This document shows positions 1 through 22,891 of a stretch of 64,000 nucleotides of DNA, in pieces. Location of the stretch: the NCBI GenBank assembly GCA_907165135.1, contig OU015568.1:4960001-5024000 (forward strand), read 5' to 3'. This stretch comes from Oikopleura dioica (Eukaryota; Animalia; Chordata). Numbering within the stretch: position 1 is the stretch's first letter; every line of letters begins with the position of its first letter. The notes below the pieces were generated by a model, which was not told the origin of the DNA, searched no databases, and saw only the letters and a program-made list of their open reading frames with translations. A program made the translations under genes and the position numbers.

Positions 1-2
1 GA

Positions 3-636: not shown

Positions 637-681
637 AAACGTTATTTTTTGCTTTTATTTAGATAGTTGAAAAGGGGGATC

Positions 682-3362: not shown

Positions 3363-3517
3363 AACCTTGTGCGCTTGAAAAATTTTTTGAAAAATAAATG
3401 TAGAAAAATTTTTTTCAGATTTACGGCGACGACGATCAACAAGAACCCGAGTTCTTATCAGCTATCATTTCCTCCACAACTACAGCCACAGACAATGTTA
3501 TTGTCTTTGACACACCG

Positions 3518-4801: not shown

Positions 4802-4829
4802 GCGGCTTGGTTGTGAGTCGAGCAAATCT

Positions 4830-5579
4830 ATGGAAACGGAGATATCTACGCCGGCGGAGAATATTGGCTCGCCAAGAGCAAGAGAGAATGGAACAAGAGA
4901 GACTGGAGCGGGAGAGATTGGAAACGCTAAAAAGAATCGAGCCTCGTTCCAATCACCAATTCCGCTACCGCCGCCGCCACTCCAACCATTACTGTCTTTC
5001 CGCAGCAACGATCAACAAATGAACGACGACGACAGAGCGCTGACAACGACGCTTCCCGATCTGCGAGTGATAACTCGACCACCACCACCACCCCCTTCGC
5101 CGTCGATGGAAAGTTCAGTGACCCCTGTCACCATCATCAACAACAACAACAATCGTCAAGAAGAGGAGGAGGAGGAGTGCCAGAGCACGCGCCGCAGCAG
5201 CCGCCGACGACCACGACGACGACGACGACGACGATGCACCGATTGCAACAACTTTCTAATGAGACATCTGGCGCTTTGTTTCACCCTTATGCTTTGCGTA
5301 ATATGGCTAGTCGCAGGTCTGAGCGTATTAGCAGTAAAAACAGCGCAGAAAAAGACAACAACAGCGGAGACAACGCTAATGGCGCGCAAAATTGCCAACC
5401 AGATGATCGAAAATCACACTCGACACAAAAACCACCACCGTCATCATCAGCACCATCGTCAGCGAAAACCAGCAACAACAACGACGACGACGACGACGAT
5501 GACGACGACAACAACTGTGGCGATTCACGAAAAAGCCCAATTTTTGGAGAGACGACAACCGCAATTCCCGTGCACTTGA
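4830..5579 (+). CDS. Predicted single-pass (type II-like) membrane protein with poly-Arg/CxxC before the TM and a His/Thr-rich distal part
   Basis: Hydrophobic segment LALCFTLMLCVIWLVAGLSVLAV preceded by RRRRRRRCTDC. Confidence 0.55.
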   Translation: METEISTPAENIGSPRARENGTRETGAGEIGNAKKNRASFQSPIPLPPPPLQPLLSFRSNDQQMNDDDRALTTTLPDLRVITRPPPPPPSPSMESSVTPVTIINNNNNRQEEEEEECQSTRRSSRRRPRRRRRRRCTDCNNFLMRHLALCFTLMLCVIWLVAGLSVLAVKTAQKKTTTAETTLMARKIANQMIENHTRHKNHHRHHQHHRQRKPATTTTTTTTMTTTTTVAIHEKAQFLERRQPQFPCT

Positions 5580-5778
5580 GTACAACAAGACAACAACAAG
5601 AAGAAGAGAAGGAAGGCAGCGGTATGAAGAGTACAAATCAATAAGTAGCCGGCGAAATTATCCTCACAAGTTATTACCACCACAACAACAACAACCACCA
5701 ACAACAACACAACACAACAACAAAAATCAGCGGCGGCAAAAACAAAAAAAGTACCAAGCCAACTATTCCGTCTATCAG

Positions 5779-7560
5779 TTGTGTGGCAGGAGAGCGCCCA
5801 AATACACGAAAAAGTATCGAGATAGCTTATTAAAATCTCTTACTGATAAATCGGGAATATTTGAAAGCTCGCCTGCAAATTTTTACATTCGAGGAAAGCA
5901 TACTCCACGCTGGTCAAAAACCCTCACTCATGACGACTGGTGTAAATTACGAGATTACTTTTTCAATTCTGACGATGGCCAAGTGTTGATGCCATTCGAG
6001 TTTTACAATAATGATGAGCGCCGCGGTCGCCGCCGCAGCCGCCGCCGCCGCCGCCGCCGCCGTCCAACGTCCAAAAAAGCTCGTTTTGACGACTATGAAG
6101 AGCACGACCATGATGATGACGACGACGACGATTGCGACTACAACTATTACGAAGAAGATGAAGACACTTATGATGACAGTTTTGAGGATGGTCGATTTAA
6201 ACTCATTGATCACGATTCCATATTTTCAATGATCTCGATGGAAAACAAGTCGGCAATTTTAGCTGTACTTGAATTTTTCTGGGTAATGCTTGAGATAGAT
6301 TTCCAATCGCCCCCGCTGGAAACTGTTCATCATTGGAAAAGCGAGCCAAATTTGGACAAAACTGACATGAGAATAGTCGCCAACGCAATTCGATTAATCA
6401 ACCCAAATTTACCCAGCAATTTTTTCCAAGAAAAATACTCAACCGCTAGAGAATTCGAGCAAATAGATTCCGCCGATTGCTATACAAATGGACTCGATGT
6501 AACAAGAGAAATTCTTCACCTCCTTTCAAATTGCATCACTTTCTCCTATATTTCGGCAAAAATGGATGGCGATAACTCGGCGGCGGCGCCAGCTTATCAA
6601 CAAAATGGCAATATTCTTGAGAAACCAATACACATGAGTGATATGTACATGTACTTGGTTTATCTCGAGTTGACAATCAGAGAATGCGCGCCGTTTTATG
6701 AATTTACGACTTTTTTATCGGACAGTAATGAAACAACTAGGAAAATGCCGGCAAGCATTGTAGCCGACTGGCGCTCAGATCGACCACGTCAATTTCGCGA
6801 AAATTATATACCCACTGCTGGCGCCTCTACACTCAACCCTAACCCTAACGAGTGTAATGAAAAGAAGAAGGGACTGTGGAGAACTTTTTGCTCGCAGGGG
6901 CCTCAGTCAATTGCCGATGTAAAAACATTGTCAAGAAAGCGATCAATATGCAGCACGTATAGTGAAGCGGTTGACACAGAAACCCTCAACAAAACACTTT
7001 TTCGCCTCAGCATCCTAAAACCAGTAACCAATCACCCACAAATCGCCTATTTGATGACGCTGAAGCGCTTCTTCAGCGGTTTCTGCTTTCTTGAGCAAAG
7101 AAAAATTGAAAAAATTTTGAAAATAACTTCGTATGAGCAAGAAATTCTCGACACGCGACTTCTTGGCAACATGGAGAGTGAAGAACAACGTGAACGCCGT
7201 TTTTCACTTCAGCATTTGATGGTCAAAGCGCGAAAACACATTTACTATCAACATCGAGCGCGAATCAAAAATTTGCTAAAACGGATGCTCGAAAATTATG
7301 TGAATTTTATTGCAACTTGTGGATCTGCTCCAAGTCTATCAAAATGCCAACTTCGCCGAGTGCAAACTCCACCTTCAAACCCAATTGCCTTTTTTGACGA
7401 TCACTACAACTCGTGGGAGATACGCTGCTCAACTTGTATTTCAACTTATAATAACGATTACAATCGAATAGAAGGTTTCATAAACCAGCTTGGCCATAAT
7501 CAAGATTTTGATCTCAAATCTGAGTTTATGTCAATGCGACGAGCTCAGCTGCATCGGTAA
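5779..7560 (+). CDS. Orphan 593-aa protein (Arg-rich NLS-like run, acidic patch, globular C-terminal two-thirds with CxxC)
   Basis: Long, high-complexity ORF; no family recognised. Confidence 0.7.
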   Translation: MCGRRAPKYTKKYRDSLLKSLTDKSGIFESSPANFYIRGKHTPRWSKTLTHDDWCKLRDYFFNSDDGQVLMPFEFYNNDERRGRRRSRRRRRRRRPTSKKARFDDYEEHDHDDDDDDDCDYNYYEEDEDTYDDSFEDGRFKLIDHDSIFSMISMENKSAILAVLEFFWVMLEIDFQSPPLETVHHWKSEPNLDKTDMRIVANAIRLINPNLPSNFFQEKYSTAREFEQIDSADCYTNGLDVTREILHLLSNCITFSYISAKMDGDNSAAAPAYQQNGNILEKPIHMSDMYMYLVYLELTIRECAPFYEFTTFLSDSNETTRKMPASIVADWRSDRPRQFRENYIPTAGASTLNPNPNECNEKKKGLWRTFCSQGPQSIADVKTLSRKRSICSTYSEAVDTETLNKTLFRLSILKPVTNHPQIAYLMTLKRFFSGFCFLEQRKIEKILKITSYEQEILDTRLLGNMESEEQRERRFSLQHLMVKARKHIYYQHRARIKNLLKRMLENYVNFIATCGSAPSLSKCQLRRVQTPPSNPIAFFDDHYNSWEIRCSTCISTYNNDYNRIEGFINQLGHNQDFDLKSEFMSMRRAQLHR

Positions 7561-8185
7561 GTGCGCATTATGCAATTTCCGCGTTCAATTTTTGTTAGTG
7601 TTATGGAAAATCACAGATCCATTTTCGACTTTTTTACTCATCATAAATTCAATTTTGGTCTACTCAATGTGCAAAACAGCAGCATTCTTGCAGCGGCTGC
7701 TGAAATTGCAGAAATTGAGAATCGCCATCATTGTGACACGCCGATGATGATGACCCCAACTCCGGCGGCGGCGGCGGGAGACATTGCATCAAAAGAAACT
7801 CAATCTGCTGCATTTGAAGTCAGCAACCCTAACAATGCAGACAATGATGATGATAAATTGATAGGTAACAACAAATTGAGTTCATAGCTCCTGTCTTCTA
7901 ACACAAATTGTCAAGAGCCGAAAGATAGCGCCGCCGCCGCCGTTGACGCCCCTGCCGACACTGGGTCAATCATTGAGATATCAAGCCAGTCTTCAGATGA
8001 TGATGACGACGACGAGGACGACGATCCGGTAAGCGCCACCCTGCGCCCACGAGCGCCGCTGCAGGCGCTCTAATTTTTTTTTCAATATAAAACCAATCAT
8101 CAAAACATTATTCAGTCATACAACTACGAGCCAAACAAAACTTTTACAGCAGAGCGCAAAAAACTGCTAAAAAAGCAGCGGCGTA

Positions 8186-10126
8186 ATGTCTCCACTCAAG
8201 CTGCTATTCAAGCATCGTTGCAAGAAGAACGATTTAAGCCTATCCGACTCGGAAATCGAGGAGGGTCGACTAGTGATCGTCGAGTCGTCGGATTCGGAGC
8301 AGGAGGAGGAAAACAAGCGCGAGAAGAATCTCAAAAGACCAGCATCGACACCATCAAACTCGTCCACAGATCTACAACAACAACCACCTCCAGCCAAGAG
8401 AGCAGCAGCAGCAGCAAACAGCAGCAGCCAAGTGCAACAACCAATAAAGCTACGACTAAAAGCTTTGAAGGGTGCAGCGAATCCGTGCCAATATTTGATG
8501 CACACTTCCGACGAATCGGCCTCAAGAAACTTCTCCCAAAACCACCAGCCAAATCAAAAAAAGATGATGATGAATGGTATTTGCCAAATGGAATATATCT
8601 CAACCCAAACTACAACGGCGAGCGGCGACGGAACAACACACAGCGACAAACCAAAGGAGGAGGAGGAGGTAATTTATCTTTTCTTAAATCAAAAAAGACA
8701 CAATCTAGAATCTTCCCCCGCCACCGATTCCACCACCAGTCGCAGAGTCAACTCCAACCAAATTCACAACAACGCCAGAGATGAAAACAGTGACGCCGTC
8801 ATCAAAAATCTACAACTGCAAGAGAAATCTCACACAAACACTATTTGGCAAAAGGTAATTTACAAATGCGACTGTGTGTGTGTGTGTTATTATGTGCTTT
8901 TTAGAAAATCGCCCCCAAAACAACCAGATGTGCAGAAAATAGCCACCAGCGAACCGTCGCCAATCAAGACAACAGTGACACGAGAAACTCAAACGGATCC
9001 GCTGCTGCCACCACCACCGTTTCAGCGGCCACAGCATGCACCAACAATCTCCAGCAACAACAACAACACTCAGCTCATCATAACAATGACAAATTACGGT
9101 CTTCTCATGACGCCAGTCAACAATTCCAATGTTCAAGTGAGCATCAACGAACTCAACCTCCCCAAAGCGTTCCATCCCATCCCTGGAACAATGCCACAAA
9201 ACATTGGAGCCAAGCGTCTCTTCATGAATGTGAGCAACCCAGCAGTAGCACCGGTGAAACCACCTCGACGAAAGAAGCAACAAAAATCCACAATCAACTC
9301 ACCGAAACAACAACAACCACCACCACCACCACACATTGGGCATCACAACCAGCACAACACCTCCATTGGCAGCAACAAAACCACTTCTTCTGGCAGCAAC
9401 AGTACAATCCCTGCATCTGGAATCATGATGGATCACACGCAGACCATCAGCCATTCAACAACGCCAACTACTCCTCAACTCAATACAACTATCCAGAGTT
9501 TCAACAGCGAATCCAACAGCAGCAGCATTTTGAGCAACAACGATTTCACAGCGGCCGACCAATGTTTTCTTCTTTCGGAGGAGAGGCAACACGTGGACAA
9601 AGCTATTCTGGAGCAAATTTACACCGACCAATTTATCAACAGAGCAACATCGGCAACAACTGGCCAACTTGGCCAGCAGACAGTCATTCCACCACCGCCA
9701 CCGCCGCCTACCAACAACCACCACCTGACTTCGCTGCCAGCGCAAACCAACACTACTACAGCTCACATTTCCAACCAAACAACGTTAACCAACAGCAGAG
9801 ACAAGAAAGCAGCGCCTCCGGCTTACAATCAAATCTTCCCACCGAAAAAGAATTCAATTATGACAAAGGATCAGCTTGCTCTCTATTTTCAACAACAGCA
9901 GCAGCAGCGGAATCAACAACTCTTTGCAGTAGCGGCGGCGGCGGCGGCGCAACAGCGTCAACCACAACGACAATTTCTTTACCGACAGCAATTATTACAC
10001 CAACAAACATACAACAGTTACGTCCCTCATCATCATCATCCAAGCAACAGCACAACAATTCAACAAACGACAAACAATTCGTACCCACATCACCAGAAAA
10101 CTACCGCCCAATTTCAACCCCGATGA
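8186..10126 (+). CDS. Orphan 646-aa Q/P/N/T-rich low-complexity protein (transactivator-like composition)
   Basis: Long ORF with basic NLS-like patches; may contain introns. Confidence 0.55.
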   Translation: MSPLKLLFKHRCKKNDLSLSDSEIEEGRLVIVESSDSEQEEENKREKNLKRPASTPSNSSTDLQQQPPPAKRAAAAANSSSQVQQPIKLRLKALKGAANPCQYLMHTSDESASRNFSQNHQPNQKKMMMNGICQMEYISTQTTTASGDGTTHSDKPKEEEEVIYLFLNQKRHNLESSPATDSTTSRRVNSNQIHNNARDENSDAVIKNLQLQEKSHTNTIWQKVIYKCDCVCVCYYVLFRKSPPKQPDVQKIATSEPSPIKTTVTRETQTDPLLPPPPFQRPQHAPTISSNNNNTQLIITMTNYGLLMTPVNNSNVQVSINELNLPKAFHPIPGTMPQNIGAKRLFMNVSNPAVAPVKPPRRKKQQKSTINSPKQQQPPPPPHIGHHNQHNTSIGSNKTTSSGSNSTIPASGIMMDHTQTISHSTTPTTPQLNTTIQSFNSESNSSSILSNNDFTAADQCFLLSEERQHVDKAILEQIYTDQFINRATSATTGQLGQQTVIPPPPPPPTNNHHLTSLPAQTNTTTAHISNQTTLTNSRDKKAAPPAYNQIFPPKKNSIMTKDQLALYFQQQQQQRNQQLFAVAAAAAAQQRQPQRQFLYRQQLLHQQTYNSYVPHHHHPSNSTTIQQTTNNSYPHHQKTTAQFQPR

Positions 10127-10321
10127 TTTTTAAAGAAATTGATACAGGTAATACAAATTTAAAAACCTTTTTATTTATGCTCTTATTCAGAAGACATAAC
10201 CTGCGACAACGACGGAACCATTGATTCAATTCTTGGACTTTGACTAACTCACTTTCTTTCAATTTTTCTTTTCTTACTAATGCGGTGTTTTAATAAAAAA
10301 CAAAAAATAATTTTAACTGAT

Positions 10322-11311
10322 TTATTTATACATCCAGGTCAGGGGATAACTTAAAATAGCAATTTGATAAGCAAGTATCCGATGAACACGAACATTTGAT
10401 TCTTTAAAAACATTGCGCCGATGAAAGGTGTTTCGCAGAATTCCATCTCTAAAGACTTGTGGTTCAATCTCACTTAGCAGCTGTTTTGCATCTTCAGGAG
10501 TTCGAATGTATTCTGTATCGTTGACTGAGCCCCATCCGTTGGCGTAGATTATTTCAGTTCTTGTTTTTGATTCTTTTTCGCCAGTCAAGTGATTATACAC
10601 AACACTTGTTGACTTTGTGCTGTAAAATGCGTCGACACTTATTCTCAAAAAACCAGAAAGATTCTTCATTAAAAGCTTAGTAGCTTTGACAACGTCGCGA
10701 TCGTTTAAAATTGTAATGACGAATCTATCGCACATTTTGCCCCCACGACCTTGTAGATCAGCTCCAGCAAGAAATTTATTGTGTTGCCATCTTTGTTCTA
10801 AATTTTGAAATAATTATTTTCAAACAAAAAAAACAAAAAACAAACGAATATAATGTTTGATTGGAAATCGAAAGGAGCTATTTCCTCCTGCAAGCGCTTC
10901 AATTTCTTCCTCTTCGAAATACGAATCATCTGGCACAATGACAGGAAAGGCGCTGTCCAAAAAGTTCTTTTCTCGAATAAGGATTTCATCATCAGATGCA
11001 ATGTTGTTATCTTTGGCGGCGGCGGCGGCGGCGGCGGTGCTTGAGCGTGGTGGAAAAAACCATTGAATTTGCAATGGCGTCAAATTAAAATCTCTTACAT
11101 TGTTTGTATAATAATCAAGAAATTTTTTTGGAATGTTTTTCGGCAGCCCATCCTGTCGCGCTCGAAGTCTTGTTAATTTTCGAATTCTCTTAATTTCGGC
11201 AAATTGCCGGTTGGCAGTCTCGCGTATTAAATCGGCTTGAGTTTGCGGCGGCGGCGGCGGCGGCAGCGGCGACAATGGTGGTGAGGATGATGGTAGTGAC
11301 ATTCTTAACAA
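10322..11311 (-). CDS. Spliced ~310-aa protein; C-terminal part resembles the terminal-protein-like N-terminal region of Polinton pPolBs
   Basis: 48-nt intron 10798-10845 fuses ORF 10820..11311 in frame to ORF 10322..10735. The ending ...ESNVRVHRILAYQIAILSYPL resembles the xSGW..I..L.I.I..Y.PL pattern. Confidence 0.55.
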
Positions 11312-11352
11312 CTCCCCTTTTTTATACTTGTTTATCGAATTTATTGTTAGAG

Positions 11353-14078
11353 TTAAATAAGCGTGCCGTCCGCTCTACACAGTGGGTAAGTTCTAATCTT
11401 GTCACAGTCGATTATTCTTTTTTTTAAAGTTGAATTTATGACGCGTTTTTTCATTATCCAAGTTTTCATTTTCTTGTTCTTTTGATCGTAATTGATAGTC
11501 GGTATGCTCTTCTCGATTCGCTCTTCCATATTATCAGAAAACAGCGCGGCCAAATATTCGTAATGACTAAACAAGTCAATAAAAACCTACACTAACGTTC
11601 TTACTTTAATTTTATCATATGAGCAACGCCTTTGGCTGAGCGCTTTTTCGCAACTGTGTTTTGATCATTTCCACCGCCTCCTCCTTCGCTGGCAATGGTG
11701 TTGTTATACTCGTCAAGTAATTTGTAAATGTGGGCTCGATTTGCAGGATCCAATAATTTTTTTTCGAAATCGCTCGTATAACATTCACTCATAATATAGC
11801 ATTTTGGCGAAAGAGCAATAAACCAACCACGAGTGATTTGCTCCTCGATTTTCAATAATCCGGGCTCCTTTTGAGATTCCGGCTCATCAGTTGCAAACCA
11901 TTTTTTAACAATTATATTGTCCCATTCTTGACGCAGCTCATCCCGCACATGCTCCTCCAGTGTTGGTCTTGTCAATGCGAGTAAAAACGAATCAGTGTCG
12001 CAATAACAGAATCGATAGGAACCCTCGCGCATATACTTGCGTAAAACATCGAGAAATTTGAAAAAGAGAAGCTTACTATTTTGATAAACAAAAATCTGAA
12101 TGTGTATGGCCAAATCTTCAATTATTCGCTTCTTTTTAAAGCTAACTTCGTGGAGAGGATCAACTCGATGGCCATCGGATTTTAGCGTTTCCATTTGCTT
12201 CAAAAGAGGATTTCTCAAAGCTCGATACAGACCATCGGCAGCGACGATTTTCGTATCTGTAAATCGACTTCGATTGACTGCAAAATTGCCAACACAAGAG
12301 TTTTGTAAAAATTTGGCGAGATTCGAGAGACTGGCATCTTTGTCGCGCACAGCTTGAACTCGATCGGCAACCATTGATCTGATAAACTTGTGAAATGGTT
12401 TTCGGCGCGTGTATTGTACAAAGTACTTTAACTTGAAAGTGATGCCCTTTTTCGCATAGTAGAGAAGAGTGTCAGATGTTGCCAAATAATTCTCAGCATG
12501 ATAGCAAAATACATTCTCATCACACGGAAAAAGATTCTTCTTTTGCTGCTCAGAGAGAGTATTCAGCAAATCACCTTGAAGATCTTCAGCGCAGAGTGTT
12601 TTCTTTACAAAAATCGGCGGAATTTCTGGATGATCGGCAATTACTTGTTCAGTTGAAAAAAGATCAACCATGGCAAAGCCAAAGAAGCGGCTTTCTCCGT
12701 CGGCATTTGTCTCTAGCAAAAGTTCTCGAAATTCATCCTCGGTGACACCCTCATCGCCAAGCGCATAACCAGTATAATTTTTAGGTGCGCCTTTAAAAAT
12801 AAATGGCATACTGATTGAAGTTGGTGGTGCGCCATCCATTACAAGCTGTCGCCACTCTTTTAGCCATTCGCAAGAATATTTTATTAATATAACTGGTGGT
12901 GAGTATGAATCGCCATCCTCATTTTTTATCAGCTCACGAATGGCGATTATTCGTTGAGCATCACGCTCGGCGAGTTCTTGCGCAGAGTAATAAACTGTTT
13001 TGGGATTTTTGGCGTCTTTTTTGATCTTGATTACTCGAGGATTGCGCTTACACTTGAAACAAGCGTGAAAAGAGCAACCCCTAAATTCGAATATGAAGCG
13101 TTTCTTTAAGCCAGTCACGTCATCAATAATTTCAGCATATCCATCTACAAAATAATCACCAATTTGCTTCTCCTTGAAATTGTAAGAATGTTGAATTCGA
13201 CCATGCCAAATTTTTTCGCTTTGAGAGTTGAGATGTTCGAGCCATTGAATTGATTGAATTGAAGAATTTTCGCGCTGTTTAAATAAACCTCTACAGAAAA
13301 ATCTTTTTTCATCGGCTGCGGTGGCGGCGGAACTCGTTATATTTATCGACACTGGCTCGAAAATCATGCCTGGACCGCTGGGTAAAAAGTGTTGAAAAAC
13401 AAACGGGTAGAGAGCGTTAAAATCCAACAGCAAACACGCAACAAACAAATCGCCATTCGGTGCGCGATAGGCCGACTCTGGAACGTGTGGCTGGGCTCCA
13501 TTTAAATATATGGCGCGATGAAGCACTTGCGTAATGCCTCCGGTGAGACTCTTACGGCAATCGCGATAAAAGTACGCAAATTCGGGCGGAATTGAGTAAA
13601 TTGGCGGCGAATTTTTATCGTAAAGTGTGAAAGCCAATCGATGAGCAATTTTTGTAATACTAATTTCCGAATGTATGCCAAGATTATACTTGGTCAAATA
13701 CTTTTCAGCATATGCCGAAATCGAACCTTCCAACAATAAAACATCATTGTAATTGTAATTGATCAAGTATTTCATCATACATGGTCTTGGTGGCGGGGGC
13801 AGCGATTGTTGCTCCATCGCGCTCTTTTCTTGTTGATACTCATCTTGCATTTCATCCCACATCTTGACGCATTCTTGATAAACACGTGGCGAAAATTTGA
13901 AAAAATCGAGAGAAGCGGCATCACACTCATCAATCACCGGATAAGGTTGATCATCCAACAGTTTAATACACTTTTCAAGAATCAAATACAAGTGAACCGA
14001 ATAGTCAAAACCATCTTCGACAAGCTTTAGCAGTAGTTTTGAAATGTTTTTTTCTAGAACAGCCATTGTCAACAACAA
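11353..14078 (-). CDS. polB: Protein-primed family B DNA polymerase, C-terminal part (ExoIII + polymerase domain + VSR/DUF559-like insertion); two exons
   Basis: YNYNDVLLL (ExoIII), LLDFNALYP (motif A), KFLQNSCVG (motif B), YCDTDS (motif C), KCY, SAKGV. A 38-nt intron 11567-11604 adds the final 70 aa (NHYEYL...KKR...TYPL). Confidence 0.92.
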
Positions 14079-14185
14079 ACCATAACAAAATGTTTTTTGA
14101 TAATTTTATACTTTTTAAAATCGAAAAAGAGATGAAGCAAAGCTAAAACTCTAAAAGGAATCTAGACACAAAGAAATTGCTCTAA

Positions 14186-16825
14186 TCATAATTTTTCAAA
14201 ACTACTCTCAATTGGACACTCGCGTCTTTCAAAGTACTCCTTAAGTGCATAATCATCCCTCAAATTGCTCAATTTCAAAAAGTTAAACACATGATCAACA
14301 ATTGTTTCACGTTTCCATCTTTTTTCGTCAATCTTTTCCTTGATAATTTCATTCATTTCAACAATGAATTTTTTGTCCTTCATCGTCAGCGTTGAATAGA
14401 AGCACGTGTAAGCAGAAAACTTGAATGTTTTGTACAATTGATCAATACTGCTAAACCATTCATAAGGAAATGAGCCTTTTGAGTAAACATCCGGATTGAG
14501 ACCGCATGATCGAGCCAAACTTTCCAATTTCATGGGGCATGTGTAGTTTTTAAAATCGCGAAAGCTAAGATTTATAGCATCAACCATCATATATCCAGAA
14601 GATCGTTTGATGATACTTATTTGAGACGCATCGCGACCACAAAACTCAAAGAGCGCAGAAATCAACGCCGGAAAGAGAACCACTAAGTCGTAACGTTCGC
14701 CAACCCAACTGTAAATTTTCAATTTCAAAAAGTCTTTCAAATAATTGAGCTTCTTTTTCATCATTCCCAAATCATGAAATGCCAATGTTGGATTCTTTTT
14801 TTCTTCTTCAATCTTCATCGAGTAATGCTCGATTCCGCTCTTTATACATGCTGGAAGATTACTTTCAAGTTGTTTTTGCAAGTGAATCAAATAATTTATA
14901 AACTCGGCGCACATAACTAACGCTGATTCAAACTCGTTGGTCCTTCTAACAAAGCACATTTTTTCCTTTTCGCTCGTATAAGTGGCAATTGTGGCGAGAT
15001 TGTGGTACTTTGATTGTGTTGAAAATGGTCCATTATTCATTAAACATTCTATATCATAAACGGCGAAAAATTTTTGCACATATGAAGATGAAGGCAAAAA
15101 CTTTTCTTCGACAAGTTCGTGAATATGCCGATTGATAGTTTGACCATCCTCAACACTTTGACGAATTATTGATATTGGCTCATCAGTGCAGACCGCTTCA
15201 TGCTTTCTCATGCGATGCGCTCTAGATGTCGTAAAAAGACAATTCTTTGTTTTGCACTTTGGCAAAACTCTGACTGCGCTATCGGGTAGTATTCTAACGC
15301 GCGTATTATCATCAAAAACATTTGGAGCCAAACAAAAAACATTGCGAATCGGGCAATACTCATCATCATCAGCATCATGATGGTTGTCACCACCACCACC
15401 ACCACCATCAATAATTGTCGTTTCAGGAGGTGGTAATGATGTTTGCGACGACAATGTTGATCGATCTTCGTGTTCGCATTCTTCATCCAAAAAAGGATTG
15501 TTTATAAATGATTTTTCAGAATCGGCGTTGTTTGTCAAATTATCAAAATCAACAACGTCATCATCGTCCTCGTCATCGGCGGCGGCGGCGGCGGCGGCGG
15601 CGGTTGGGCTGGTCTGCTCTTCATCATCATCATCATCTTGATCTGCCGCACGATGATATCGATGACCAGCGGTATTACACCAATTACGAATTTTATTCAT
15701 TTTAGAATCGCTCATGTTCAAGCATTTGGCTCTTCTTCGATTGAAATCCAAGTCCTCCGAGAAAAGAGCCAAAAGACCAGGATTATTATGAAATTGACGA
15801 TAAGAAACCGAAGTTAATTTTTTAAATTCTTTTTCAAACTCATCTTCTTTATATGAAGCAACCAATAAATTTAATTGTTTCATCTGAGAACTTCCAATAA
15901 CCTTGTAAACACAAGACTTTAAATTAACATTATCATTTAAAATTTTTCCAACAAATAGAGCAATATTTATTCCAAATCGTGATCTGATGCGCTTAAAAAC
16001 ATCATCGCCAATCGTGAAAACATTAAAGGATTTTTCACCAATAATTGTGTTTTTAACAAAAAGCGCTTTCTCATCCAAACGCTCTCCGCCAAGATTTGGC
16101 CATTTTGTTTTGGCAACTGCTCTCCAAATCGAAACCCATTCAGAATCACAACGGTTTGCTGATTCTCGATTTGGCAAAACATGAAAAACTCCGAGACGGT
16201 GAAAGAATGGTCGAGCAGATTGCAGAACAACACGTGCTCGATCACTGCTGATGTCAACATTGAATAGCTCGCCAACATTTGTTGTAACTAACTCATCCCT
16301 TTGCGCGCGATATGACACGCCAAGAGGTGCATACTTTCCACCATAGAGTACGTAAATATCCACGTTTAAATATCGCTCCACTTGAGATATTGTTGCTCTT
16401 GTTGGAAATTCGCCAAATTTTTCAATTAATTCAGTCGGATCTACACATGATAATTCCTCGCGGAGAGCTCTAGTTATTTTCGTTGGCACAGATGGATATG
16501 ATCTCTTATAGAAATTCGACCATTTGATACCCATTAAAACGGCGGCATAGAAATTTGAATAATTTTCCAAAGTGCAACTGTCGTCAACTGGTGTATACTC
16601 TTTACTGCTGCTGCTACTACTGCTGCAGTGACGACGACGAGAAGTAGCTGATGTTGTAGGCTGATCATCGTCATTATTTGAGAGTCGCTCCTCAGATAAT
16701 ATTTGTATGTTTCGACTTTTTGTTAAAAAACGCCTGCGTCTCTTTTTAGCGGCATTGTCCAAACCGCCAGGATGTTTCTTTGGTAGAAACCTTTTCATAC
16801 TCTTGAACTTCAAACAAAAACACAC
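14186..16825 (-). CDS. polB: Protein-primed PolB, N-terminal part (OTU-like repeats, Zn-finger-like CxxxxC..H..C, ExoI/ExoII)
   Basis: AVYDIECL (ExoI), ERYDLVVL (ExoII), FRDFKNY, KGSFPYEWF. Ends at its own stop codon, in a different frame from the polymerase ORF. Confidence 0.85.
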   Translation of the reverse strand: MCFCLKFKSMKRFLPKKHPGGLDNAAKKRRRRFLTKSRNIQILSEERLSNNDDDQPTTSATSRRRHCSSSSSSSKEYTPVDDSCTLENYSNFYAAVLMGIKWSNFYKRSYPSVPTKITRALREELSCVDPTELIEKFGEFPTRATISQVERYLNVDIYVLYGGKYAPLGVSYRAQRDELVTTNVGELFNVDISSDRARVVLQSARPFFHRLGVFHVLPNRESANRCDSEWVSIWRAVAKTKWPNLGGERLDEKALFVKNTIIGEKSFNVFTIGDDVFKRIRSRFGINIALFVGKILNDNVNLKSCVYKVIGSSQMKQLNLLVASYKEDEFEKEFKKLTSVSYRQFHNNPGLLALFSEDLDFNRRRAKCLNMSDSKMNKIRNWCNTAGHRYHRAADQDDDDDEEQTSPTAAAAAAAADDEDDDDVVDFDNLTNNADSEKSFINNPFLDEECEHEDRSTLSSQTSLPPPETTIIDGGGGGGDNHHDADDDEYCPIRNVFCLAPNVFDDNTRVRILPDSAVRVLPKCKTKNCLFTTSRAHRMRKHEAVCTDEPISIIRQSVEDGQTINRHIHELVEEKFLPSSSYVQKFFAVYDIECLMNNGPFSTQSKYHNLATIATYTSEKEKMCFVRRTNEFESALVMCAEFINYLIHLQKQLESNLPACIKSGIEHYSMKIEEEKKNPTLAFHDLGMMKKKLNYLKDFLKLKIYSWVGERYDLVVLFPALISALFEFCGRDASQISIIKRSSGYMMVDAINLSFRDFKNYTCPMKLESLARSCGLNPDVYSKGSFPYEWFSSIDQLYKTFKFSAYTCFYSTLTMKDKKFIVEMNEIIKEKIDEKRWKRETIVDHVFNFLKLSNLRDDYALKEYFERRECPIESSFEKL

Positions 16826-16907
16826 ATGTTTTTATACTCGATAATATTTTTTATTTCACCACGGCGCTGTTACTTCTTTACAGCTCAACAGCGCCTCCAA
16901 TATATAA

Positions 16908-18726
16908 TTATGAGCCGGCTTTTCTTTTCCCTGAATTCATTTTGCTTCTGTCAGCCATCGTTGACAAAATTGTCGCCTCTAAAAATTGTTTTTTTCTCAA
17001 AAAAATAAAAGTGAAACAAACCTTTTCGATTCCCATCAAGCATAATCGCATCAATGGGTATCTTCATCACAAGAACATCCCAATTTTCTTCAAGAATCTT
17101 TTCAAACGTAATTCTTGCAGTTATCGTGGCACTCTCTCCTTGTCTATCATCAAAAAGCAACGGAACCATCCAAGATTGATTTTGAAATTGAAAGAAATCC
17201 AATCCTCCTCCAATTGATTTGTTTTCATAACGTCCATTATGCATCAAGAAATTCTGATAGTGTTCCAGAGGATCAGTCCAAGGCGTCAAAAAAGCATTGT
17301 AATTGTCAACCAAAACTTCAAATTCCCTTATTTTAAAACCATCCTCATGCATCGTCGTTTTTGTTATACATCGTTGATAATCCGGTCTTTGACGTTTTTT
17401 GTTGGACATACCAGTCAACACTATCATATAAGGCACTGGTCCAGAGCTCAACTCCACCTCATAACTTGCAAGCCCTTTTGACAAAACGTGTATTTTTAAT
17501 CGAGGATAAAAAAAGGGAATCTTGAGCATTTTATCACTGTTACCAACTTTGATTGGTTTTTCACATTCTCTTGCTTTGCAGAAAACACTCTTTAGCCAAA
17601 AATTATGAAGATTTGGCTCTTGACCCTCTATGACGACATCTTCAGCTGTTGGAATTGAAGCTCTTTGTAGCCAAAAGCAGGCATAACTTTTGTTGTCAAT
17701 CTTTTTAACTCGAATTTTTGGAACTTTTTTGGTGATTTTATGCGCTTTGAAGGTCGATGAATTACAAATAGAAGTTTTATCTGTAACAGGTGCTTCATTG
17801 ACATTTAAGATTTGTTCAAGTGTTGAAACATCATATTCACCGCTCGTGATCTTGTCTTTGTAAGAAGCAGGATCGTCTTCTCCTTTTGGAATTGCACAAT
17901 CGCACTTATTCACAGTATCATGAATAAGGGTTTTTGTTTCAAATTCAACTCCAGATTCTTCATTAAACGGAAATTTTAGCTCATCTGAAAAAAAATCCGT
18001 ATCTTCTGATCGACATTCAATATAATCACTATGCCTCATGATATAATTTTTTGTTGGAGCAAGAGTGGTATTAAACCAGAGGCGAGAGGCTGGAGGTAAA
18101 ACTCGAGCTTGGCGAGCCAATCCGTGCGAAATTGGCGCTTTAATCTTATAAATATGATGCTTGAACTCATATTTTACTTTTCGTTGGTCTTTTCCAATTT
18201 TTATATATCGAGCCGATTCAAGGTTTTCCTCTCGCCATATGGACGTCGCATGCAACAACCGATTCTCAAGAGCAGTCAAATTATTACTCTTCAATCTGTA
18301 ATCATTCAACTCATTCGCATCCAGATCATAAGCATCAAAATGACCTTCAGGAAAAAGCTCAATTTCTTGCGCTGATGGTGAGTAATTTAACTTTTTTATA
18401 AAATGATTGAAAAAAGCATACTCTAAACCTTCTGTGTACGACGAGAATATCGTGCTGTCCATAATGTTTATGTCCATTTTTGAAAATATTTTTGACCCGA
18501 TTTCATTATCAGGAACGCAATTTGATGGGATCTCGATATCAAACTCAAATTGCATTTTGTCCAACTTGATGGGAAGTTTGTCTTTTGGAGTTTCAAACCG
18601 CCAAGTGTATGGCAAATCTTTAACCCCCAAACGTCTGACCGTTTTTAATCCATTGAATGGATCCATAGGGCGCTTGGAATCTTTATAAAATAAAAGATTT
18701 CCATAATCGCTTGTTGATTCTGGCAT
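16908..18726 (-). CDS. Polinton-type double jelly-roll major capsid protein
   Basis: YAFFNHFIKKLNY...KIKAPISHGLARQARVLP...GPVPYMIVL...IDAIMLDGNR matches the Polinton MCP layout. A possible terminal 43-nt intron (16979-17021) moves the stop from 16951 to 16908. Confidence 0.75.
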
Positions 18727-19041
18727 CGTTATTTTTCTTCCTAAATTAACAGGTTAAAAAGAAAATACTTGCTGCTGCTGCTGCTGCTGCTGATGTTTAT
18801 CGTTTGTCGATGTTCTTGTTGTTGTTTTTGTTGATTAATTGTGACGATGGAGAGAAGTTGTGATTGCTAAAAAGAGAATTTATTTAAGAGAATTAAAAAA
18901 AGAATTGAGTGAAAATTTCTCTCTTATTTTCAAAAGAGAATATAAGATAAGACTAATAATAGTCAATTGGATAACAAAGCAAAAAATCAGGGACGCGTAT
19001 TTGTAGTTTCTGTAGAATCCATCGATAAATCCAGGTGAACA

Positions 19042-19284
19042 CTAAAAATTTTTTGAAAAAACATCATAAACATGTTGCCACACCTCTATTGAGTTTACCA
19101 GCGTCGTCTTCGAGAGTACGCGTTGCTTCGTCTCCGCTTTGGGGCCTTTCTTGTCGACTTTTTTCGTTTGGTTGTTTTCCGGCGACTTGAGCGTCTTTTT
19201 CTTACAAGAGGTCCCACTGAATAAACTCGTGGAAACCTCGAAATTCGAGCCATTGGAACACACTTTTACAATCTTAATAAACAA
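19042..19284 (-). CDS. Small Lys-rich orphan ORF
   Basis: ORF track only. Confidence 0.25.
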   Translation of the reverse strand: MFIKIVKVCSNGSNFEVSTSLFSGTSCKKKTLKSPENNQTKKVDKKGPKAETKQRVLSKTTLVNSIEVWQHVYDVFSKNF

Positions 19285-19313
19285 AAATTGATTTTTTTAA
19301 AAACATTGTATTT

Positions 19314-21415
19314 TTACTTCATTTCAGAAATAGGAATAACAACATTCAATTCATTTTCATAATATCGTCTAGATTGAGGATGACCAAATGAATTCACCAA
19401 AGAAAATGTTGGAACTTTTGACCCCTGATGTATTTGAATAACTTGAAACAAATCTCTCGACCATTTTTCTTTAAAACCTTTTACAAAATTCTTTTTAGAA
19501 TTCGAAGATTTTGCTATTCTTACAACATCGCCTAATCCAACTAGCGATTTTCGCTTTCTATTATATAGAGATCTTTTTTGTTCAAGATAATCAAATAAAA
19601 CACGAGCGTTTTTACGTGTTATAGCAGAAGGAGCGACTCCAATAGTCGAATGCACAGAGTTATTAATAGCTGTGTTGACTTCTTGAAGTATGTGGATCCA
19701 GCGTTGAACACCGCCAGAAGCAGTAAAATAACGACCCAATCGAGCTTCTAACGTTCCACTGAATTTCGTTTAATAAAAAAATTTTTATTTTTAAATACTC
19801 ACTTGAATCGCTCGACGAGAGCGGCCTTGTGTCTACCCTGAAGATGAACAGGTGTCATCGACCATCGGGCAAGCAAGTCATAAGTGTCTTTTTCAAATTC
19901 AACGCCTTGATCAGAGCAGAAAAAAGTGTGTCCAGGAAGATCTTCACCTATTTTCACAAAAATTGATTCCAATTCCTTGGCTATTTCAGCAGATTTAAGA
20001 GACATTAAAGGAGCAACAAAACTTCTGCGCGAAAGTCCATCAATAACAGTAAGAATATATTTATAGCCATTGTTTAAATGAGCATAATTTTTAAATGCAG
20101 CGATTGTGTCGGAAAACAAACATGTAAACAAACCAGTCGCAATAATTGGATTACGCTCAAAATTAGATTTAAACGGCTTATGTAAGGAAATCGCATTGTT
20201 CATGCGTTTAAAACGAGACAAATTCATACCACTATAAAAAGAAGGATTTTTACTATTATAAAACAAATCAAGAGCTGAGCTTGGACGTTGAGAAAAAAGA
20301 GGCGCATCAAATGTTGTTGTATTATTAACCCCAGAAGTTGTCGATGTCTGCTCCGCCGCCGCCGCCGCCGCCGCCGCCGCCCCGTCCGACGTGCGATTCA
20401 TTCTCTTCGTCGCCGTCGTCAATGTAGAGTCGATCCTCATCGGACTCCTCATCGGATCGAGATTCGATCCCGTCTGGGTCATAATAGTGGGATTTTTTAA
20501 TGGCGCTTGAAGTTGGAGAGACGGCATTCTTACTTGACGATTGAGATTTTGGTTTAGCGAGTTTACGCTGTTTTGTGGCTCGTACGGTAGTGACACGTCC
20601 AGCGGCTCGCTTTGATCGCTTTGGTCGTTTTGAAAGTTGCTCGTCTTCGTCACGGTCGACGTCGGCGTCGTCATAAGCGTTGTTGTAAAAGGGAGTTTGT
20701 TCTCTGATACGTCGTCTGCCATTGATTCGGGCAACTCTTGAATTCGATTTGACGCTATTGGCAATAGATTCCGTCTCGGAGGTGTCTTCATCACTTGCAG
20801 TTGAATTGGAAAACTCAATTGCCCTTTTGCGTTTCGAGTCCCGATTACTTGCGTTAGAAATTGCACTCCTCCATTTTCGGTAATCATTGCTGGTGATAGG
20901 ATACTCTTTGAGGCGACTTGGGCGAAGGAGTGGTTTTCGGGGATGTTTTGTAACTGGTTCAGGTTCCGCGAAATTTGATTTTTCCAAACGGTTAGATCGC
21001 TTTGATTTGACGACTGGACTTGCTGATCCAGAATCGGACCGTCGTTTGCGAATATTGCCACGTCGCGATTCTCTTCGGGCGCTCGTTGCTCGAGTGACGG
21101 GTTTTCTTGAAAGCTGACTACGCTTGATACGGGCTTGAAGTTTTTGTCGTCGAGTTTTTGCCTCTTGCTCGAGCTTTTTGATGTGGAATTCCTCTTCGTC
21201 TTCCGAGTTTGAGAACTCGACTGATTCGCTTTCTCTTTCGCTTTCGCTTTCGCTTTCGCTTTCCGATACGCTTCTTTTTCTGCTCTTTCTCGTTGCTCGA
21301 TCACTTCCGTAAGGAATTTCTCTGTTGCATATACCGGCGATAGTGCGGGCGCTCGTGTCCTCCTCGGTCTCATAATCAGGATATGGCTCTGCTTTGGTCT
21401 TTGGCGCAATAACAC
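19314..21415 (-). CDS. int: Retroviral-like (rve, c-integrase) integrase; two exons; true start uncertain
   Basis: YILTVIDGLSR, FCSDQGVEF and LVERF|NGTLEARLGRYF after removal of the 44-nt intron 19759-19802; HSTIGVAP; GDVVRI; KGFKEKWS. Confidence 0.92.
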
Positions 21416-21515
21416 GGATACGATTTGTCTTTGGATTCAGTTCCCAAAATGAAGCAATATTATCCAAGATTGATAATCGAACGAAACAACCACCGTTTAC
21501 CAGTGCGTTATTCAT
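20325..21515 (-). CDS. 396-aa Arg/Ser/Lys-rich protein overlapping the integrase ORF (candidate DNA-condensing core protein)
   Basis: Long ORF in a different frame from the integrase ORF. A 41-nt GT-AG intron (21517-21557) lies just before the ATG. Confidence 0.6.
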   Translation of the reverse strand: MNNALVNGGCFVRLSILDNIASFWELNPKTNRIRVIAPKTKAEPYPDYETEEDTSARTIAGICNREIPYGSDRATRKSRKRSVSESESESESERESESVEFSNSEDEEEFHIKKLEQEAKTRRQKLQARIKRSQLSRKPVTRATSARRESRRGNIRKRRSDSGSASPVVKSKRSNRLEKSNFAEPEPVTKHPRKPLLRPSRLKEYPITSNDYRKWRSAISNASNRDSKRKRAIEFSNSTASDEDTSETESIANSVKSNSRVARINGRRRIREQTPFYNNAYDDADVDRDEDEQLSKRPKRSKRAAGRVTTVRATKQRKLAKPKSQSSSKNAVSPTSSAIKKSHYYDPDGIESRSDEESDEDRLYIDDGDEENESHVGRGGGGGGGGGGADIDNFWG

Positions 21516-21753
21516 CCTGATTAAAAAAATAACTACTAAAAAATTTTTACGACTTACCTTGAGTGAAAATTGTAATTTTTACCGTTTGCGGCTTCTTATT
21601 CAGAAGAATAATTATTTATGAATAAACATGCTTGTAAACTCTATTATATAATTATGAAAAAGAGTAGAGACAGCAATCACGCCGCCTAGCGGATTTTTTA
21701 AAATACCTAGTATAAATACCATAGGTATAACCTAATTATATCACAACTCAAAA

Positions 21754-22161
21754 ATGTTTCAACATCTTAACTTTGATCAACTTCAACAAATTGGCAGCAA
21801 GTCCAAGCGAGCTAGAATTTTAAAAACAAACTTCAACCACCACGTCATCAAAGGAAAGGAACAGTATTACATCAAAGCGAGCGTTGCAGAACTTGTTGAC
21901 GCGGAAGGAGAGGAAAAGTTTGGGATTGAAAAATTGGAGATCAACAAAACAGCCACTTTTGCACTGATTGAGAATAATTTCAATCTTGACTGTCCGAAAA
22001 CACGCAACTGGTTTAAAAGGAAGTGCCAGAAGCTCTTCGAAGAGAAAACACCCTCATCGTCTCAATCTACGAATACCAGCCTCAAGCCGAAGAGTACAAG
22101 GGAAAATACATCACCGATCCTGAATCTCAGATCGACGGGCGATTCGTCATCTGTGGATTGA
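21754..22161 (+). CDS. Orphan 135-aa protein immediately upstream of the ATPase
   Basis: ATG downstream of TATAAA motifs (21711, 21726); stop 1 nt before the ATPase ATG. Confidence 0.55.
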   Translation: MFQHLNFDQLQQIGSKSKRARILKTNFNHHVIKGKEQYYIKASVAELVDAEGEEKFGIEKLEINKTATFALIENNFNLDCPKTRNWFKRKCQKLFEEKTPSSSQSTNTSLKPKSTRENTSPILNLRSTGDSSSVD

Positions 22162-22162
22162 A

Positions 22163-22891
22163 ATGCCCCAGCATATAATCAAATGGGTCCCCGATCCGCG
22201 CTTTCAACATCCTAGCGCGCTTCTTATATCGGGAACCACTGGTGCAGGTAAAAGTTATTTCGTAAAAAATATAATTGAGAAAGAGGGAATAGTAGGAGAC
22301 ATTAAACATATTTATTATTTTATGCCTAGACTAGAAAATTTGGATATTCAACCGTTACCCCATCAACAATTATACTTGATGGAAGGTTTGCCAACTAAAA
22401 ACTGGGTTGACGACACATTTAAAAGTGAAAATAAAAATTGTATGATAATTGTCGATGACATGTGGTCTAAATGCGTTGAAGACCCAGTTATTGAATATCT
22501 TCTAACATATGGTCGTAGGCACTTCAATGTCTCGCTAATCTTCATTGCTCAAAACTTTTACGAAAAGAGTCGAAAGGCGATCACTCTCAGGTATGAACAC
22601 ATTTTTACCATTTTTTAAAAAGCTTTATTTAGAAACTGTATGACTGCATATATTTTATTCAAAAATAATACTGACACTGGTATGAATAAAACTATTGCCA
22701 CGAAGACAGGAGAAGTGGACGCCTACAATTCAGCCATGAAACTCTTTAAAGAAAGAAGAATTCCTGCCTACTCGTACGTTATATTTAATCGAGATACCAT
22801 CAACATGGACCAAGCAACTGTACTCACTAATTATTTTGGTGAAATACCGGGGCTTGGACCTTGGTTGTGGATTTTCGGGTATAATGACTGA
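22163..22891 (+). CDS. A32/FtsK-family genome packaging ATPase; exons 22163..22590 and 22633..22891
   Basis: Walker A GTTGAGKS, Walker B IIVDD, GRRH, IFIAQN. A 42-nt intron restores ITLRNCMTAYILFKN. Confidence 0.92.

What the first reader, a model, noticed from the sequence alone, without database searches (positions are those of the whole stretch)
14054..14205. pPolB is split into two ORFs between ExoII and ExoIII
Seen: ORF 14186..16825 (ExoI/II) stops at ...SSFEKL*. ORF 11601..14078 (ExoIII + polymerase) begins about 110 nt later in another frame, with its own ATG (14066) and a TATAAAA at 14110-14104 upstream. Alternatively, a 152-nt phase-1 intron (14205 to 14054, GTAGTT...TTCTAG) would fuse them in frame into a polypeptide of about 1,750 aa. 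Known: protein-primed PolBs are normally single chains. Inference: this is either a heterodimeric split polymerase whose proofreading site is shared between two chains, or a very large spliced polymerase.
Basis: partly seen in the sequence, partly recalled or inferred. Interest (0 to 1): 0.8.

Follow-up and report, generated by a model that had tools for sequence, protein, structure and literature searches.

The report
Virus-like polymerase gene in two pieces
In a virus-like element in the genome of the tunicate Oikopleura, relatives encode the giant DNA polymerase as one chain of about 1,800 residues, but here a short spacer resembling the element's own promoters interrupts it, so this copy probably makes the enzyme in two pieces, or not at all.

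Summary
Two long open frames on the minus strand carry ExoI/II and ExoIII plus the polymerase motifs, in different frames, about 110 nt apart.

- **Context.** The window is Oikopleura dioica-like DNA. It holds a Polinton/Maverick-like element with a protein-primed PolB, an A32-type ATPase and an rve-like integrase.
- **Family norm.** More than 15 relatives run through this point as one chain. The closest are 1,807-1,849 aa, and three of them come from short metagenome contigs. A very large single polymerase is therefore normal here, and the interruption is peculiar to this copy.
- **Splicing.** The gene is certainly spliced elsewhere. A 38-nt intron and a 70-codon third exon follow the second ORF, and I found 8 tiny canonical introns in the element.
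- **The proposed intron is weak.** Its GT scores like a random GT. At 152 nt it is three times the local norm of 36-57 nt. Nine in-frame GT-AG pairs occur there by chance.
- **Promoter-like spacer.** The spacer carries AGTATAAAA, which occurs four times in 64 kb, each time 24-44 nt upstream of an ATG of an element ORF. It also resembles two intergenic promoter/leader regions of the element.

Best reading (about 0.45): two separately expressed cistrons. Rivals: dead lesion (0.3), atypical intron (0.2).

The parts
11353..16798 (-). [quoted passage not shown] It comprises an N-terminal extension, the exonuclease part, the polymerase part and a short last exon. It is interrupted once by a non-coding-looking spacer with a change of frame.
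   Evidence: All catalytic motifs can be read intact, and there are no internal stops in the 879-, 825- and 70-codon frames.
14054..14205 (-). The interval of the finding (bounds as given to me). It is an AT-rich spacer (GC 0.27, T 0.45) with stops in all frames.
14104..14112 (-). AGTATAAAA, a promoter-like 9-mer, sense, 44 nt upstream of the first ATG of the downstream ORF.
16830..16838 (-). AGTATAAAA, 38 nt upstream of the polymerase start codon. It follows the AATAAA of the upstream gene (16850-16855).
11320..11328 (-). AGTATAAAA, 24 nt upstream of the ATG of the next minus-strand ORF. It follows the polymerase poly(A) signal AATAAA (11340-11345).
21709..21717 (+). AGTATAAAT, 43 nt upstream of the ATG of ORF 21754..22161.
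15236..16798 (-). Conserved N-terminal extension of the polymerase, about 520 aa, of no known family. It ends in a Cys/His zinc-finger-like motif.
12180..12494 (-). Best Pfam DNA_pol_B_2 stretch (profile positions 315-419).
11567..11604 (-). 38-nt canonical intron (GTAAGA...TTTAG) at the end of the second ORF. Relative P0001's ORF ends at the same residue.
11353..11566 (-). Last exon of the polymerase (70 codons plus stop), homologous to the C-termini of relatives P0005 and P0006.
22163..22891 (+). A32-type packaging ATPase gene, two exons, with a 42-nt canonical intron at 22591-22632. No breaks seen.
19314..21415 (-). rve-like integrase gene with a 44-nt canonical intron at 19759-19802. No breaks seen.
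1..22891 (.). Visible part of the Polinton/Maverick-like element. It runs off the left edge of the window, the right end is not defined, and no terminal inverted repeats were found.

Best explanation
In this copy of an Oikopleura Polinton/Maverick-like element, the polymerase gene has been cut into two cistrons. Relatives encode it as one chain of about 1,800 aa. The cut is a spacer of about 110 nt that is built like the element's own intergenic regions: a promoter-like AGTATAAAA module, a short T/G-rich leader, and an ATG in strong context.

Inferred mechanism:
1. A long transcript starts at the polymerase promoter and is translated into the first protein (N-terminal extension plus ExoI/ExoII).
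2. A shorter transcript starts at the spacer's promoter, about 30 nt downstream of the TATA motif. It is translated from the first ATG of the second ORF into ExoIII plus the polymerase.
3. Both transcripts lose the 38-nt 3' intron and end at the same AATAAA.

Shown: the two intact ORFs, the promoter-like module and its likeness to the other gene starts, the single-chain state of all relatives, and the splicing signals elsewhere in the gene. Inferred: that the module is used, and that the two chains associate so that the proofreading site is built from both.
For: - **Motif specificity.** AGTATAAAW occurs 4 times in 64 kb on both strands (1.18 expected). All four are in the element and in sense orientation, 24-44 nt upstream of an ATG. 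Three are at other gene starts and the fourth is in the spacer.
- **Likeness to real intergenic regions.** The spacer aligns to the upstream regions of the polymerase and of the next gene better than 99.8% of shuffles. It also beats all but 20 and 39 of 5,030 real windows of the same size.
- **Start codon.** The ATG lies within the first 6 codons of the open frame, with A at -3 and G at +4. Only 14 of 111 long open frames have such an ATG, and only 2 of 111 have that context.
- **Intact coding.** Both ORFs and the third exon are fully open, and ExoI, ExoII, ExoIII, motifs A, B, C and KxY are all readable. The ATPase and integrase are also intact.
- **Weak splice model.** The donor scores -3.6 bits, against at least 5.9 in 21 local introns. 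The best GT anywhere in the zone scores 1.5 bits. The length is 152 nt against 36-57 nt.
- **Precedent.** Oikopleura Tor retroelements express a downstream gene from an internal promoter (PMC4402516).
Against: - No relative shares the split. All that reach this point, more than 15 at 40-54% identity, are continuous.
- There is no AATAAA for the first cistron in the spacer, unlike the two true intergenic regions.
- A 4-codon upstream ATG lies just before the proposed start.
- On an AlphaFold model of relative P0003, the equivalent point is a short turn between two confident helices (pLDDT about 91), inside an ordered subdomain between ExoII and ExoIII. It is not a floppy linker.
- Promoter use is inferred from sequence alone. 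I defined the 9-mer after seeing all four sites, so its significance is somewhat inflated.
- A non-functional copy could persist by using polymerase supplied by other copies.
Confidence: 0.45

Rival explanations
1. Dead lesion. The spacer is an insertion that inactivated the polymerase of this copy recently. The promoter-like module is either incidental or came along with a piece of the element's own intergenic DNA. Neither product works, and the copy persists passively or uses polymerase from other copies.
For: - Most endogenous Mavericks are degraded: 96% of vertebrate loci (PMC8097293).
- All relatives are continuous at this point.
- The spacer is extra sequence relative to the relatives. 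The end of the first ORF and the head of the second align to overlapping columns of relatives. The spacer is bracketed by a perfect 13-nt inverted repeat and a short imperfect direct repeat, as insertions often are.
- The equivalent point in a relative's model lies in an ordered helical region.
Against: - There are no further lesions. Frames of 879, 825 and 70 codons are open, all catalytic motifs are present, and the ATPase and integrase are intact.
- A random insertion would rarely bring the element's own promoter-like module, in the right orientation and at the right distance, with an in-frame ATG in strong context.
- The spacer is not a repeat found elsewhere in the window.
Confidence: 0.3
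2. Atypical spliceosomal intron. The spacer is removed from the pre-mRNA and one chain of about 1,765 aa is made, as in relatives. The intron is either the 152-nt GT-AG interval of the finding or a 170-nt GC-AG alternative.
For: - The gene and the element are certainly spliced. I found eight tiny canonical introns in element genes, including one at the 3' end of this gene at the residue where the ORF of a 48%-identical relative also ends.
- The spacer has intron-like composition (GC 0.27, T 0.45) and a fair acceptor (4.2 bits, 92nd percentile).
- An in-frame GC-AG candidate has an otherwise consensus donor.
- O. dioica has 11-12% non-GT/AG introns (PMC8008620).
- Interruption sites seem to differ among relatives: P0002, P0003 and P0004 all depart from the family after the same residue, where the window is continuous.
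Against: - The named GT scores -3.6 bits, the 68th percentile of all 6,072 GTs in the window. All 21 confident local introns score at least 5.9 bits (at least 3.4 leave-one-out).
- No GT in the zone exceeds 1.5 bits.
- The length is three times the local norm of 36-57 nt, and O. dioica's median is 48-51 nt.
- An in-frame pair is expected by chance.
- Two-intron micro-exon models hit a stop (hand check).
- Single-ORF relatives have no intron here.
- This model does not explain the promoter-like module.
Confidence: 0.2
3. Operon-type expression. One primary transcript is made, and the second ORF is released as its own mRNA by spliced-leader trans-splicing at the strong acceptor inside the spacer. 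This again gives two chains.
For: - The best acceptor of the zone (10.0 bits) lies inside the spacer and fits no in-frame cis pair.
- Other element genes abut closely: ORF 21754..22161 ends 1 nt before the ATPase ATG.
- From my own knowledge, O. dioica uses spliced-leader trans-splicing and operons.
Against: - I did not test for trans-splicing here.
- The leader after that acceptor would hold the short upstream ATG.
- The TATA-type module makes a separate transcription start the simpler reading.
Confidence: 0.05

Closest known systems
Protein-primed PolB of Polintons/Mavericks and adintoviruses
   Same: - Pfam DNA_pol_B_2 match.
- Exo and polymerase motifs can be read.
- The model of a relative is closest in fold to adintovirus, bidnavirus-type, adenovirus and tectivirus polymerases (E down to 3e-11).
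- The gene is linked to an A32-type ATPase and an rve-like integrase.
   Different: - The protein is about 1,800 aa instead of about 1,000-1,400.
- It has a conserved N-terminal extension of about 520 aa with no known family.
- The gene carries spliceosomal introns, whereas intact vertebrate Mavericks are intron-less (PMC8097293).
- In this copy the chain is interrupted between ExoII and ExoIII.
Internal promoter of Oikopleura Tor retroelements (env expression)
   Same: A mobile element of the same host expresses a downstream reading frame from a promoter inside the element rather than by splicing (PMC4402516).
   Different: - Tor is a retroelement, and its promoter serves a separate gene rather than half of an enzyme.
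- Use of the promoter was shown there by 5' RACE. Here it is inferred from sequence.
Naturally split family B polymerases of some archaea (two genes, two subunits; from my own knowledge, not tested here)
   Same: One family B polymerase is made from two polypeptides that must associate.
   Different: - Those are RNA/DNA-primed archaeal enzymes, and their split is conserved across related genomes.
- Here the split lies inside the exonuclease domain of a protein-primed enzyme and is seen in one copy only.
Terminal-protein/polymerase fusions of fungal and yeast linear plasmids (from my own knowledge)
   Same: A long N-terminal extension sits in front of a protein-primed PolB.
   Different: No sequence or family match was found for the extension here. 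A terminal-protein role is a guess only.

Membership tests
[quoted passage not shown] | Significant match to the family profile | tested here: met
   E 3.2e-13 and 49.8 bits against a cut-off of 25.8, for the downstream ORF. Relatives P0018 and P0019 also match. The upstream ORF alone has no match.
[quoted passage not shown] | ExoI, ExoII, ExoIII and polymerase motifs A, B, C and KxY present | tested here: met
   Read directly in the translations. The first 260 aa of the downstream ORF match profile positions 123-221. The Asn of ExoII is not conserved in this lineage.
[quoted passage not shown] | Fold closest to known protein-primed polymerases | tested here: met
   The model of relative P0003 (pLDDT 72.7) hits adintovirus, adenovirus, bidnavirus-type and tectivirus polymerases (26 hits at E<=1e-3). 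PDB hits are all family B polymerases but weak (E>=2e-3).
[quoted passage not shown] | Priming from a terminal protein | not testable with these tools
   This is a biochemical property.
Polinton/Maverick | pPolB together with a retroviral-type (rve) integrase | tested here: inconclusive
   The pPolB feature is met. The rve match is only E 0.003 and 18.2 bits, below the cut-off of 32.6. A D..D..E pattern and the usual residues after the catalytic Glu can be read across a canonical intron.
Polinton/Maverick | A32/FtsK-type packaging ATPase | tested here: met
   Pox_A32 E 2.5e-9 and 37.4 bits, against a cut-off of 22.8.
Polinton/Maverick | Double and single jelly-roll capsid proteins and an adenain-type protease | tested here: inconclusive
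   Pfam and PHROGs gave no family hit for the other long ORFs. I did not fold them.
Polinton/Maverick | Terminal inverted repeats and a 6-bp target-site duplication | tested here: not met
   No inverted repeat brackets the element within the window. The element runs off the left edge, so the ends may simply be out of view.
Spliceosomal intron of this genome (as the identity of the spacer) | Consensus donor (GTAAGT, GTAAGA, GTGAG or GTATGA) | tested here: not met
   -3.6 bits, against at least 5.9 in 21 local introns. The best GT in the zone scores 1.5 bits. A GC donor with otherwise consensus positions exists.
Spliceosomal intron of this genome (as the identity of the spacer) | Length in the local range | tested here: not met
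   152 nt (or 170 nt), against 36-57 nt locally and a median of 48-51 nt in O. dioica (PMC8008620).
Spliceosomal intron of this genome (as the identity of the spacer) | T-rich tract plus YAG acceptor, and an in-frame junction | tested here: met
   The acceptor scores 4.2 bits, the 92nd percentile. An in-frame junction is expected by chance, since 9 GT-AG pairs fit.
Spliceosomal intron of this genome (as the identity of the spacer) | Shared by relatives or seen in transcripts | tested here: not met
   The proteins of all relatives are continuous here. P0003, P0018, P0020 and P0161 come from short metagenome contigs and are most simply single ORFs. No transcripts were available.
Naturally split (two-subunit) polymerase | Each part has its own expression signals | tested here: inconclusive
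   The second part has a promoter-like module, a leader and an ATG in strong context. There is no poly(A) signal after the first part.
Naturally split (two-subunit) polymerase | Split conserved in related genomes | tested here: not met
   None of the relatives found is split at this point.
Naturally split (two-subunit) polymerase | The two chains associate and are active | not testable with these tools

The most novel reading that the evidence does not exclude
A functional two-chain protein-primed PolB. The proofreading domain would be assembled from two polypeptides: ExoI/II on one, ExoIII plus the polymerase on the other. They would be expressed from nested transcripts that share one 3' end, through a promoter that the element copied into its own polymerase gene. 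All this would occur in a lineage of Maverick-like elements that, unlike those of vertebrates, carries spliceosomal introns.
Probability: 0.22. Interest if true: 0.75.

Novelty: new variant of a known kind. Interest (0 to 1): 0.5.

Why it matters
Protein-primed PolBs are known as single chains. A natural copy that makes the enzyme from two cistrons would show where the exonuclease domain tolerates a cut. It would also show how a virus-like element can rewire one of its genes with a copy of its own promoter.

Two further points hold whichever way the split is resolved:
- This lineage encodes unusually large polymerases of about 1,800 aa, with a conserved N-terminal domain that matches no known family.
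- Its genes carry tiny host-type introns, at least one of which appears shared with a 48%-identical relative. Intact vertebrate Mavericks are reported to be intron-less. This bears on how long such elements have lived under the host's nuclear gene-expression rules.

If the spacer is only a lesion, the finding is ordinary.

Tried and rejected
- **Simple frameshift or assembly error: rejected.** The ORFs are separated by about 110 nt of AT-rich sequence with stops in all frames. Relatives have no counterpart for it.
- **Two tiny introns around a micro-exon (55 + 58 nt): rejected.** I checked this by hand and it hits a stop.
- **Spacer as a repeated mobile element: no support.** No second copy exists in the window beyond 15-nt matches.
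- **The 15-mer shared with 29568-29582 and 50305-50319: left as probable chance.** It is the start-codon context of two host genes read on the other strand. In the spacer it lies antisense and opens a 4-codon frame.
- **Stable RNA structure across the spacer: no support.** The z-score is -0.01, although the minimum-energy fold uses the 13-nt inverted repeat.
- **Family scans with no useful result.** Pfam and PHROGs found nothing for the upstream ORF or for the other long element ORFs. Pfam and PDB sequence searches of the N-terminal extension gave only low-complexity noise. Pfam found nothing for the Cys/His-rich insert of the downstream ORF, which by eye recalled a Vsr-type nuclease motif, so that likeness stays an untested lead.
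- **PDB fold search.** Only weak hits came back, all to family B polymerases.
Full report
**1. What is there**

The two open frames, the stop, the ATG, the TATAAAA and the GT/AG strings named in the finding are all present. The phase arithmetic is right.

- The downstream ORF (825 codons) matches Pfam DNA_pol_B_2 at E 3e-13. Its first 260 residues match profile positions 123-221.
- The upstream ORF (879 codons) has no family hit. Its last 340 residues are 49-54% identical to the exonuclease part of relatives.
- ExoI, ExoII, ExoIII, motifs A, B, C and KxY can all be read intact.

**2. Context**

A host gene in the window, an MFS transporter exon, is 94% identical to a gene model of Oikopleura dioica OKI2018_I69. 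All named relatives of the polymerase are O. dioica models as well. The window is therefore O. dioica-like DNA.

The first 23 kb or so hold a Polinton/Maverick-like element:
- the polymerase;
- an A32-type packaging ATPase (Pox_A32, E 2.5e-9);
- an rve-like integrase (E 0.003, below the cut-off, but with a readable D..D..E pattern).

Capsid and protease genes were not recognised. No terminal inverted repeats lie in the window, and the element runs off its left edge. Host genes (Kelch, MFS, galactosyltransferase, trypsin-like) follow from about 26.6 kb.

A fold search with a model of a relative likens the polymerase to those of adintoviruses, adenoviruses and bidnavirus-type viruses. I therefore worked under the bars for virus-like elements of animals.

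**3. The family norm is one very large chain**

- Relative P0003 is a 1,022-aa protein from a 4.2-kb metagenome contig. It aligns to the end of the upstream ORF and to the downstream ORF in one chain, with about 19 residues between the two blocks.
- In an alignment with the window's two pieces kept apart, 12 relatives all run through this point.
- The exhaustive search with the exonuclease part found 240 relatives. The best are P0018 (1,842 aa, contig 5,990 nt), P0019 (1,825 aa, an O. dioica gene model), P0020 (1,807 aa) and P0161 (1,849 aa).
- The window's pieces add up to about 1,765 aa from the true start, which fits this family.
- P0012 aligns to the upstream ORF from its tenth codon on at 46% identity. 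So the N-terminal extension of about 520 aa is real coding sequence. It is conserved in 8 proteins and matches nothing known.

**4. The gene is spliced, but not convincingly here**

I scanned for short GT..AG intervals that bridge long open frames, then filtered for consensus donors. This gave 21 confident introns, 8 in element genes and 13 in host genes. All are 36-57 nt, with GTAAGT, GTAAGA, GTGAG or GTATGA donors and T-rich YAG acceptors.

- One lies in the ATPase. It is 42 nt and holds an in-frame stop, and the conserved motif continues after it.
- One lies in the integrase, just after the catalytic Glu.
- One lies at the very end of the downstream polymerase ORF. It is 38 nt and is followed by a 70-codon exon that matches the C-termini of P0005 and P0006. 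An AATAAA lies 10 nt after the stop.
- The ORF of P0001, which is 48% identical, ends at the same residue. That intron therefore appears to be shared with a diverged relative.

Intact vertebrate Mavericks are reported to be intron-less (PMC8097293), so these introns are notable in themselves.

Scored with a weight matrix built from the 21 introns:
- The GT named in the finding scores -3.6 bits. That is the 68th percentile of all 6,072 GTs in the window, against a training minimum of 5.9 and a leave-one-out minimum of 3.4.
- The AG scores 4.2 bits, the 92nd percentile.
- The interval is three times the local length norm.
- Around the junction there are 37 in-frame open donor/acceptor pairs, 9 of them GT-AG. 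No GT there exceeds 1.5 bits.
- The top pair is a 170-nt GC-AG candidate.

O. dioica has 11-12% non-GT/AG introns and a median intron of 48-51 nt (PMC8008620). An atypical intron is therefore possible, but not favoured.

**5. The spacer looks like one of the element's intergenic regions**

- The TATAAAA is part of the 9-mer AGTATAAAW. This occurs four times in the window (1.18 expected), always in the element and always in sense orientation. It lies 38, 24 and 43 nt upstream of the ATGs of the polymerase, the next gene and ORF 21754, and 44 nt upstream of the ATG of the downstream polymerase ORF.
- At two of the true gene starts the motif follows the AATAAA of the preceding gene by 12-13 nt. 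The spacer has no AATAAA.
- The spacer aligns to the upstream regions of the polymerase and of the next gene better than 99.8% of shuffles. It also beats all but 20 and 39 of 5,030 real windows of equal length.
- The ATG lies within the first six codons of its open frame, with A at -3 and G at +4. Of 111 long open frames, 14 have such an ATG and 2 have that context.
- Internal promoters are documented in another Oikopleura mobile element, Tor (PMC4402516).

**6. Other features of the spacer**

- It has GC 0.27 and T 0.45, and it is not repeated elsewhere in the window.
- A perfect 13-nt inverted repeat brackets it. About 0.57 such repeats are expected per 64 kb, so roughly 0.003 at this particular spot. 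A short imperfect direct repeat also flanks it.
- The RNA fold is no more stable than shuffles.
- The tail of the upstream ORF and the head of the downstream ORF align to overlapping columns of relatives. This fits an insertion-type origin.
- On an AlphaFold model of P0003 (pLDDT 72.7), the equivalent point is a short turn between two confident helices in the long insert between ExoII and ExoIII.

**7. Weighing**

- The intron reading must accept a random-looking donor, an unusual length and a chance promoter module.
- The lesion reading must accept the promoter module and an in-frame strong ATG by chance, in a copy with no other lesion.
- The two-cistron reading explains these features. Against it, it is unique to this copy, it has no poly(A) signal for the first cistron, and it has no functional evidence.

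I put two cistrons at 0.45, lesion at 0.30, intron at 0.20 and the trans-splicing variant at 0.05.

Count of breaks: the polymerase has one interruption, an inserted spacer with a change of frame. The ATPase has none and the integrase has none. I did not assess the other genes.

Noticed in passing
window 255-300, 1764-1804, 2668-2707, 4541-4584, 7557-7598, 22591-22632 (+); 19759-19802, 11567-11604 (-): Eight tiny (38-46 nt) canonical introns lie in genes of the Maverick-like element. Intact vertebrate Mavericks are reported to be intron-less. One intron, at the polymerase 3' end, appears to be shared with a 48%-identical metagenome relative.
   Followed up: partly
window 15236-16798 (-): The polymerase has an N-terminal extension of about 520 aa, conserved in 8 relatives, with no Pfam or PDB sequence match. 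It ends in a Cys/His zinc-finger-like motif just before ExoI. A terminal-protein role is only a guess.
   Followed up: partly
window 12819-13286 (-): The polymerase carries a Cys/His-rich insert that is conserved in relatives. By eye it recalls a Vsr-type nuclease motif, but Pfam found nothing.
   Followed up: partly
window 16850-16855 with 16830-16838, and 11340-11345 with 11320-11328 (-): Intergenic modules are compact: the AATAAA of one gene is followed 12-13 nt later by the AGTATAAAA of the next. The transcription units are packed as in a virus.
   Followed up: partly
window 22159-22165 (+): ORF 21754..22161 (135 aa, no family) ends one base before the ATG of the ATPase gene. The arrangement is operon-like.
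   Followed up: no
relatives P0002, P0003, P0004 (proteins): All three depart from the family right after the same conserved residue in the palm region, where the window's gene is continuous. P0002 resumes about 100 residues later. These copies probably carry an intron or insert there.
   Followed up: no
window 29563-29582 and 50305-50324: Two unrelated host genes share 20 identical bases around their start codons (AGAAAAAGAGATGAAGAGGA on the coding strand). A 15-nt part recurs antisense inside the polymerase spacer.
   Followed up: partly
window 59918-63146: A retroelement with a reverse-transcriptase ORF (RVT_1, E 8e-11). It is flanked by 247-252-nt repeats in both inverted and direct arrangement, which is DIRS-like.
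   Followed up: partly
window 34524-34880, 38750-38862, 55350-55515: Foldback (MITE-like) inverted repeats, with arms of 49-81 nt or more.
   Followed up: no
window 29459-32482 and 32420-36257: A tandem duplication of about 3-3.9 kb, 81-97% identical, that carries a galactosyltransferase gene.
   Followed up: no
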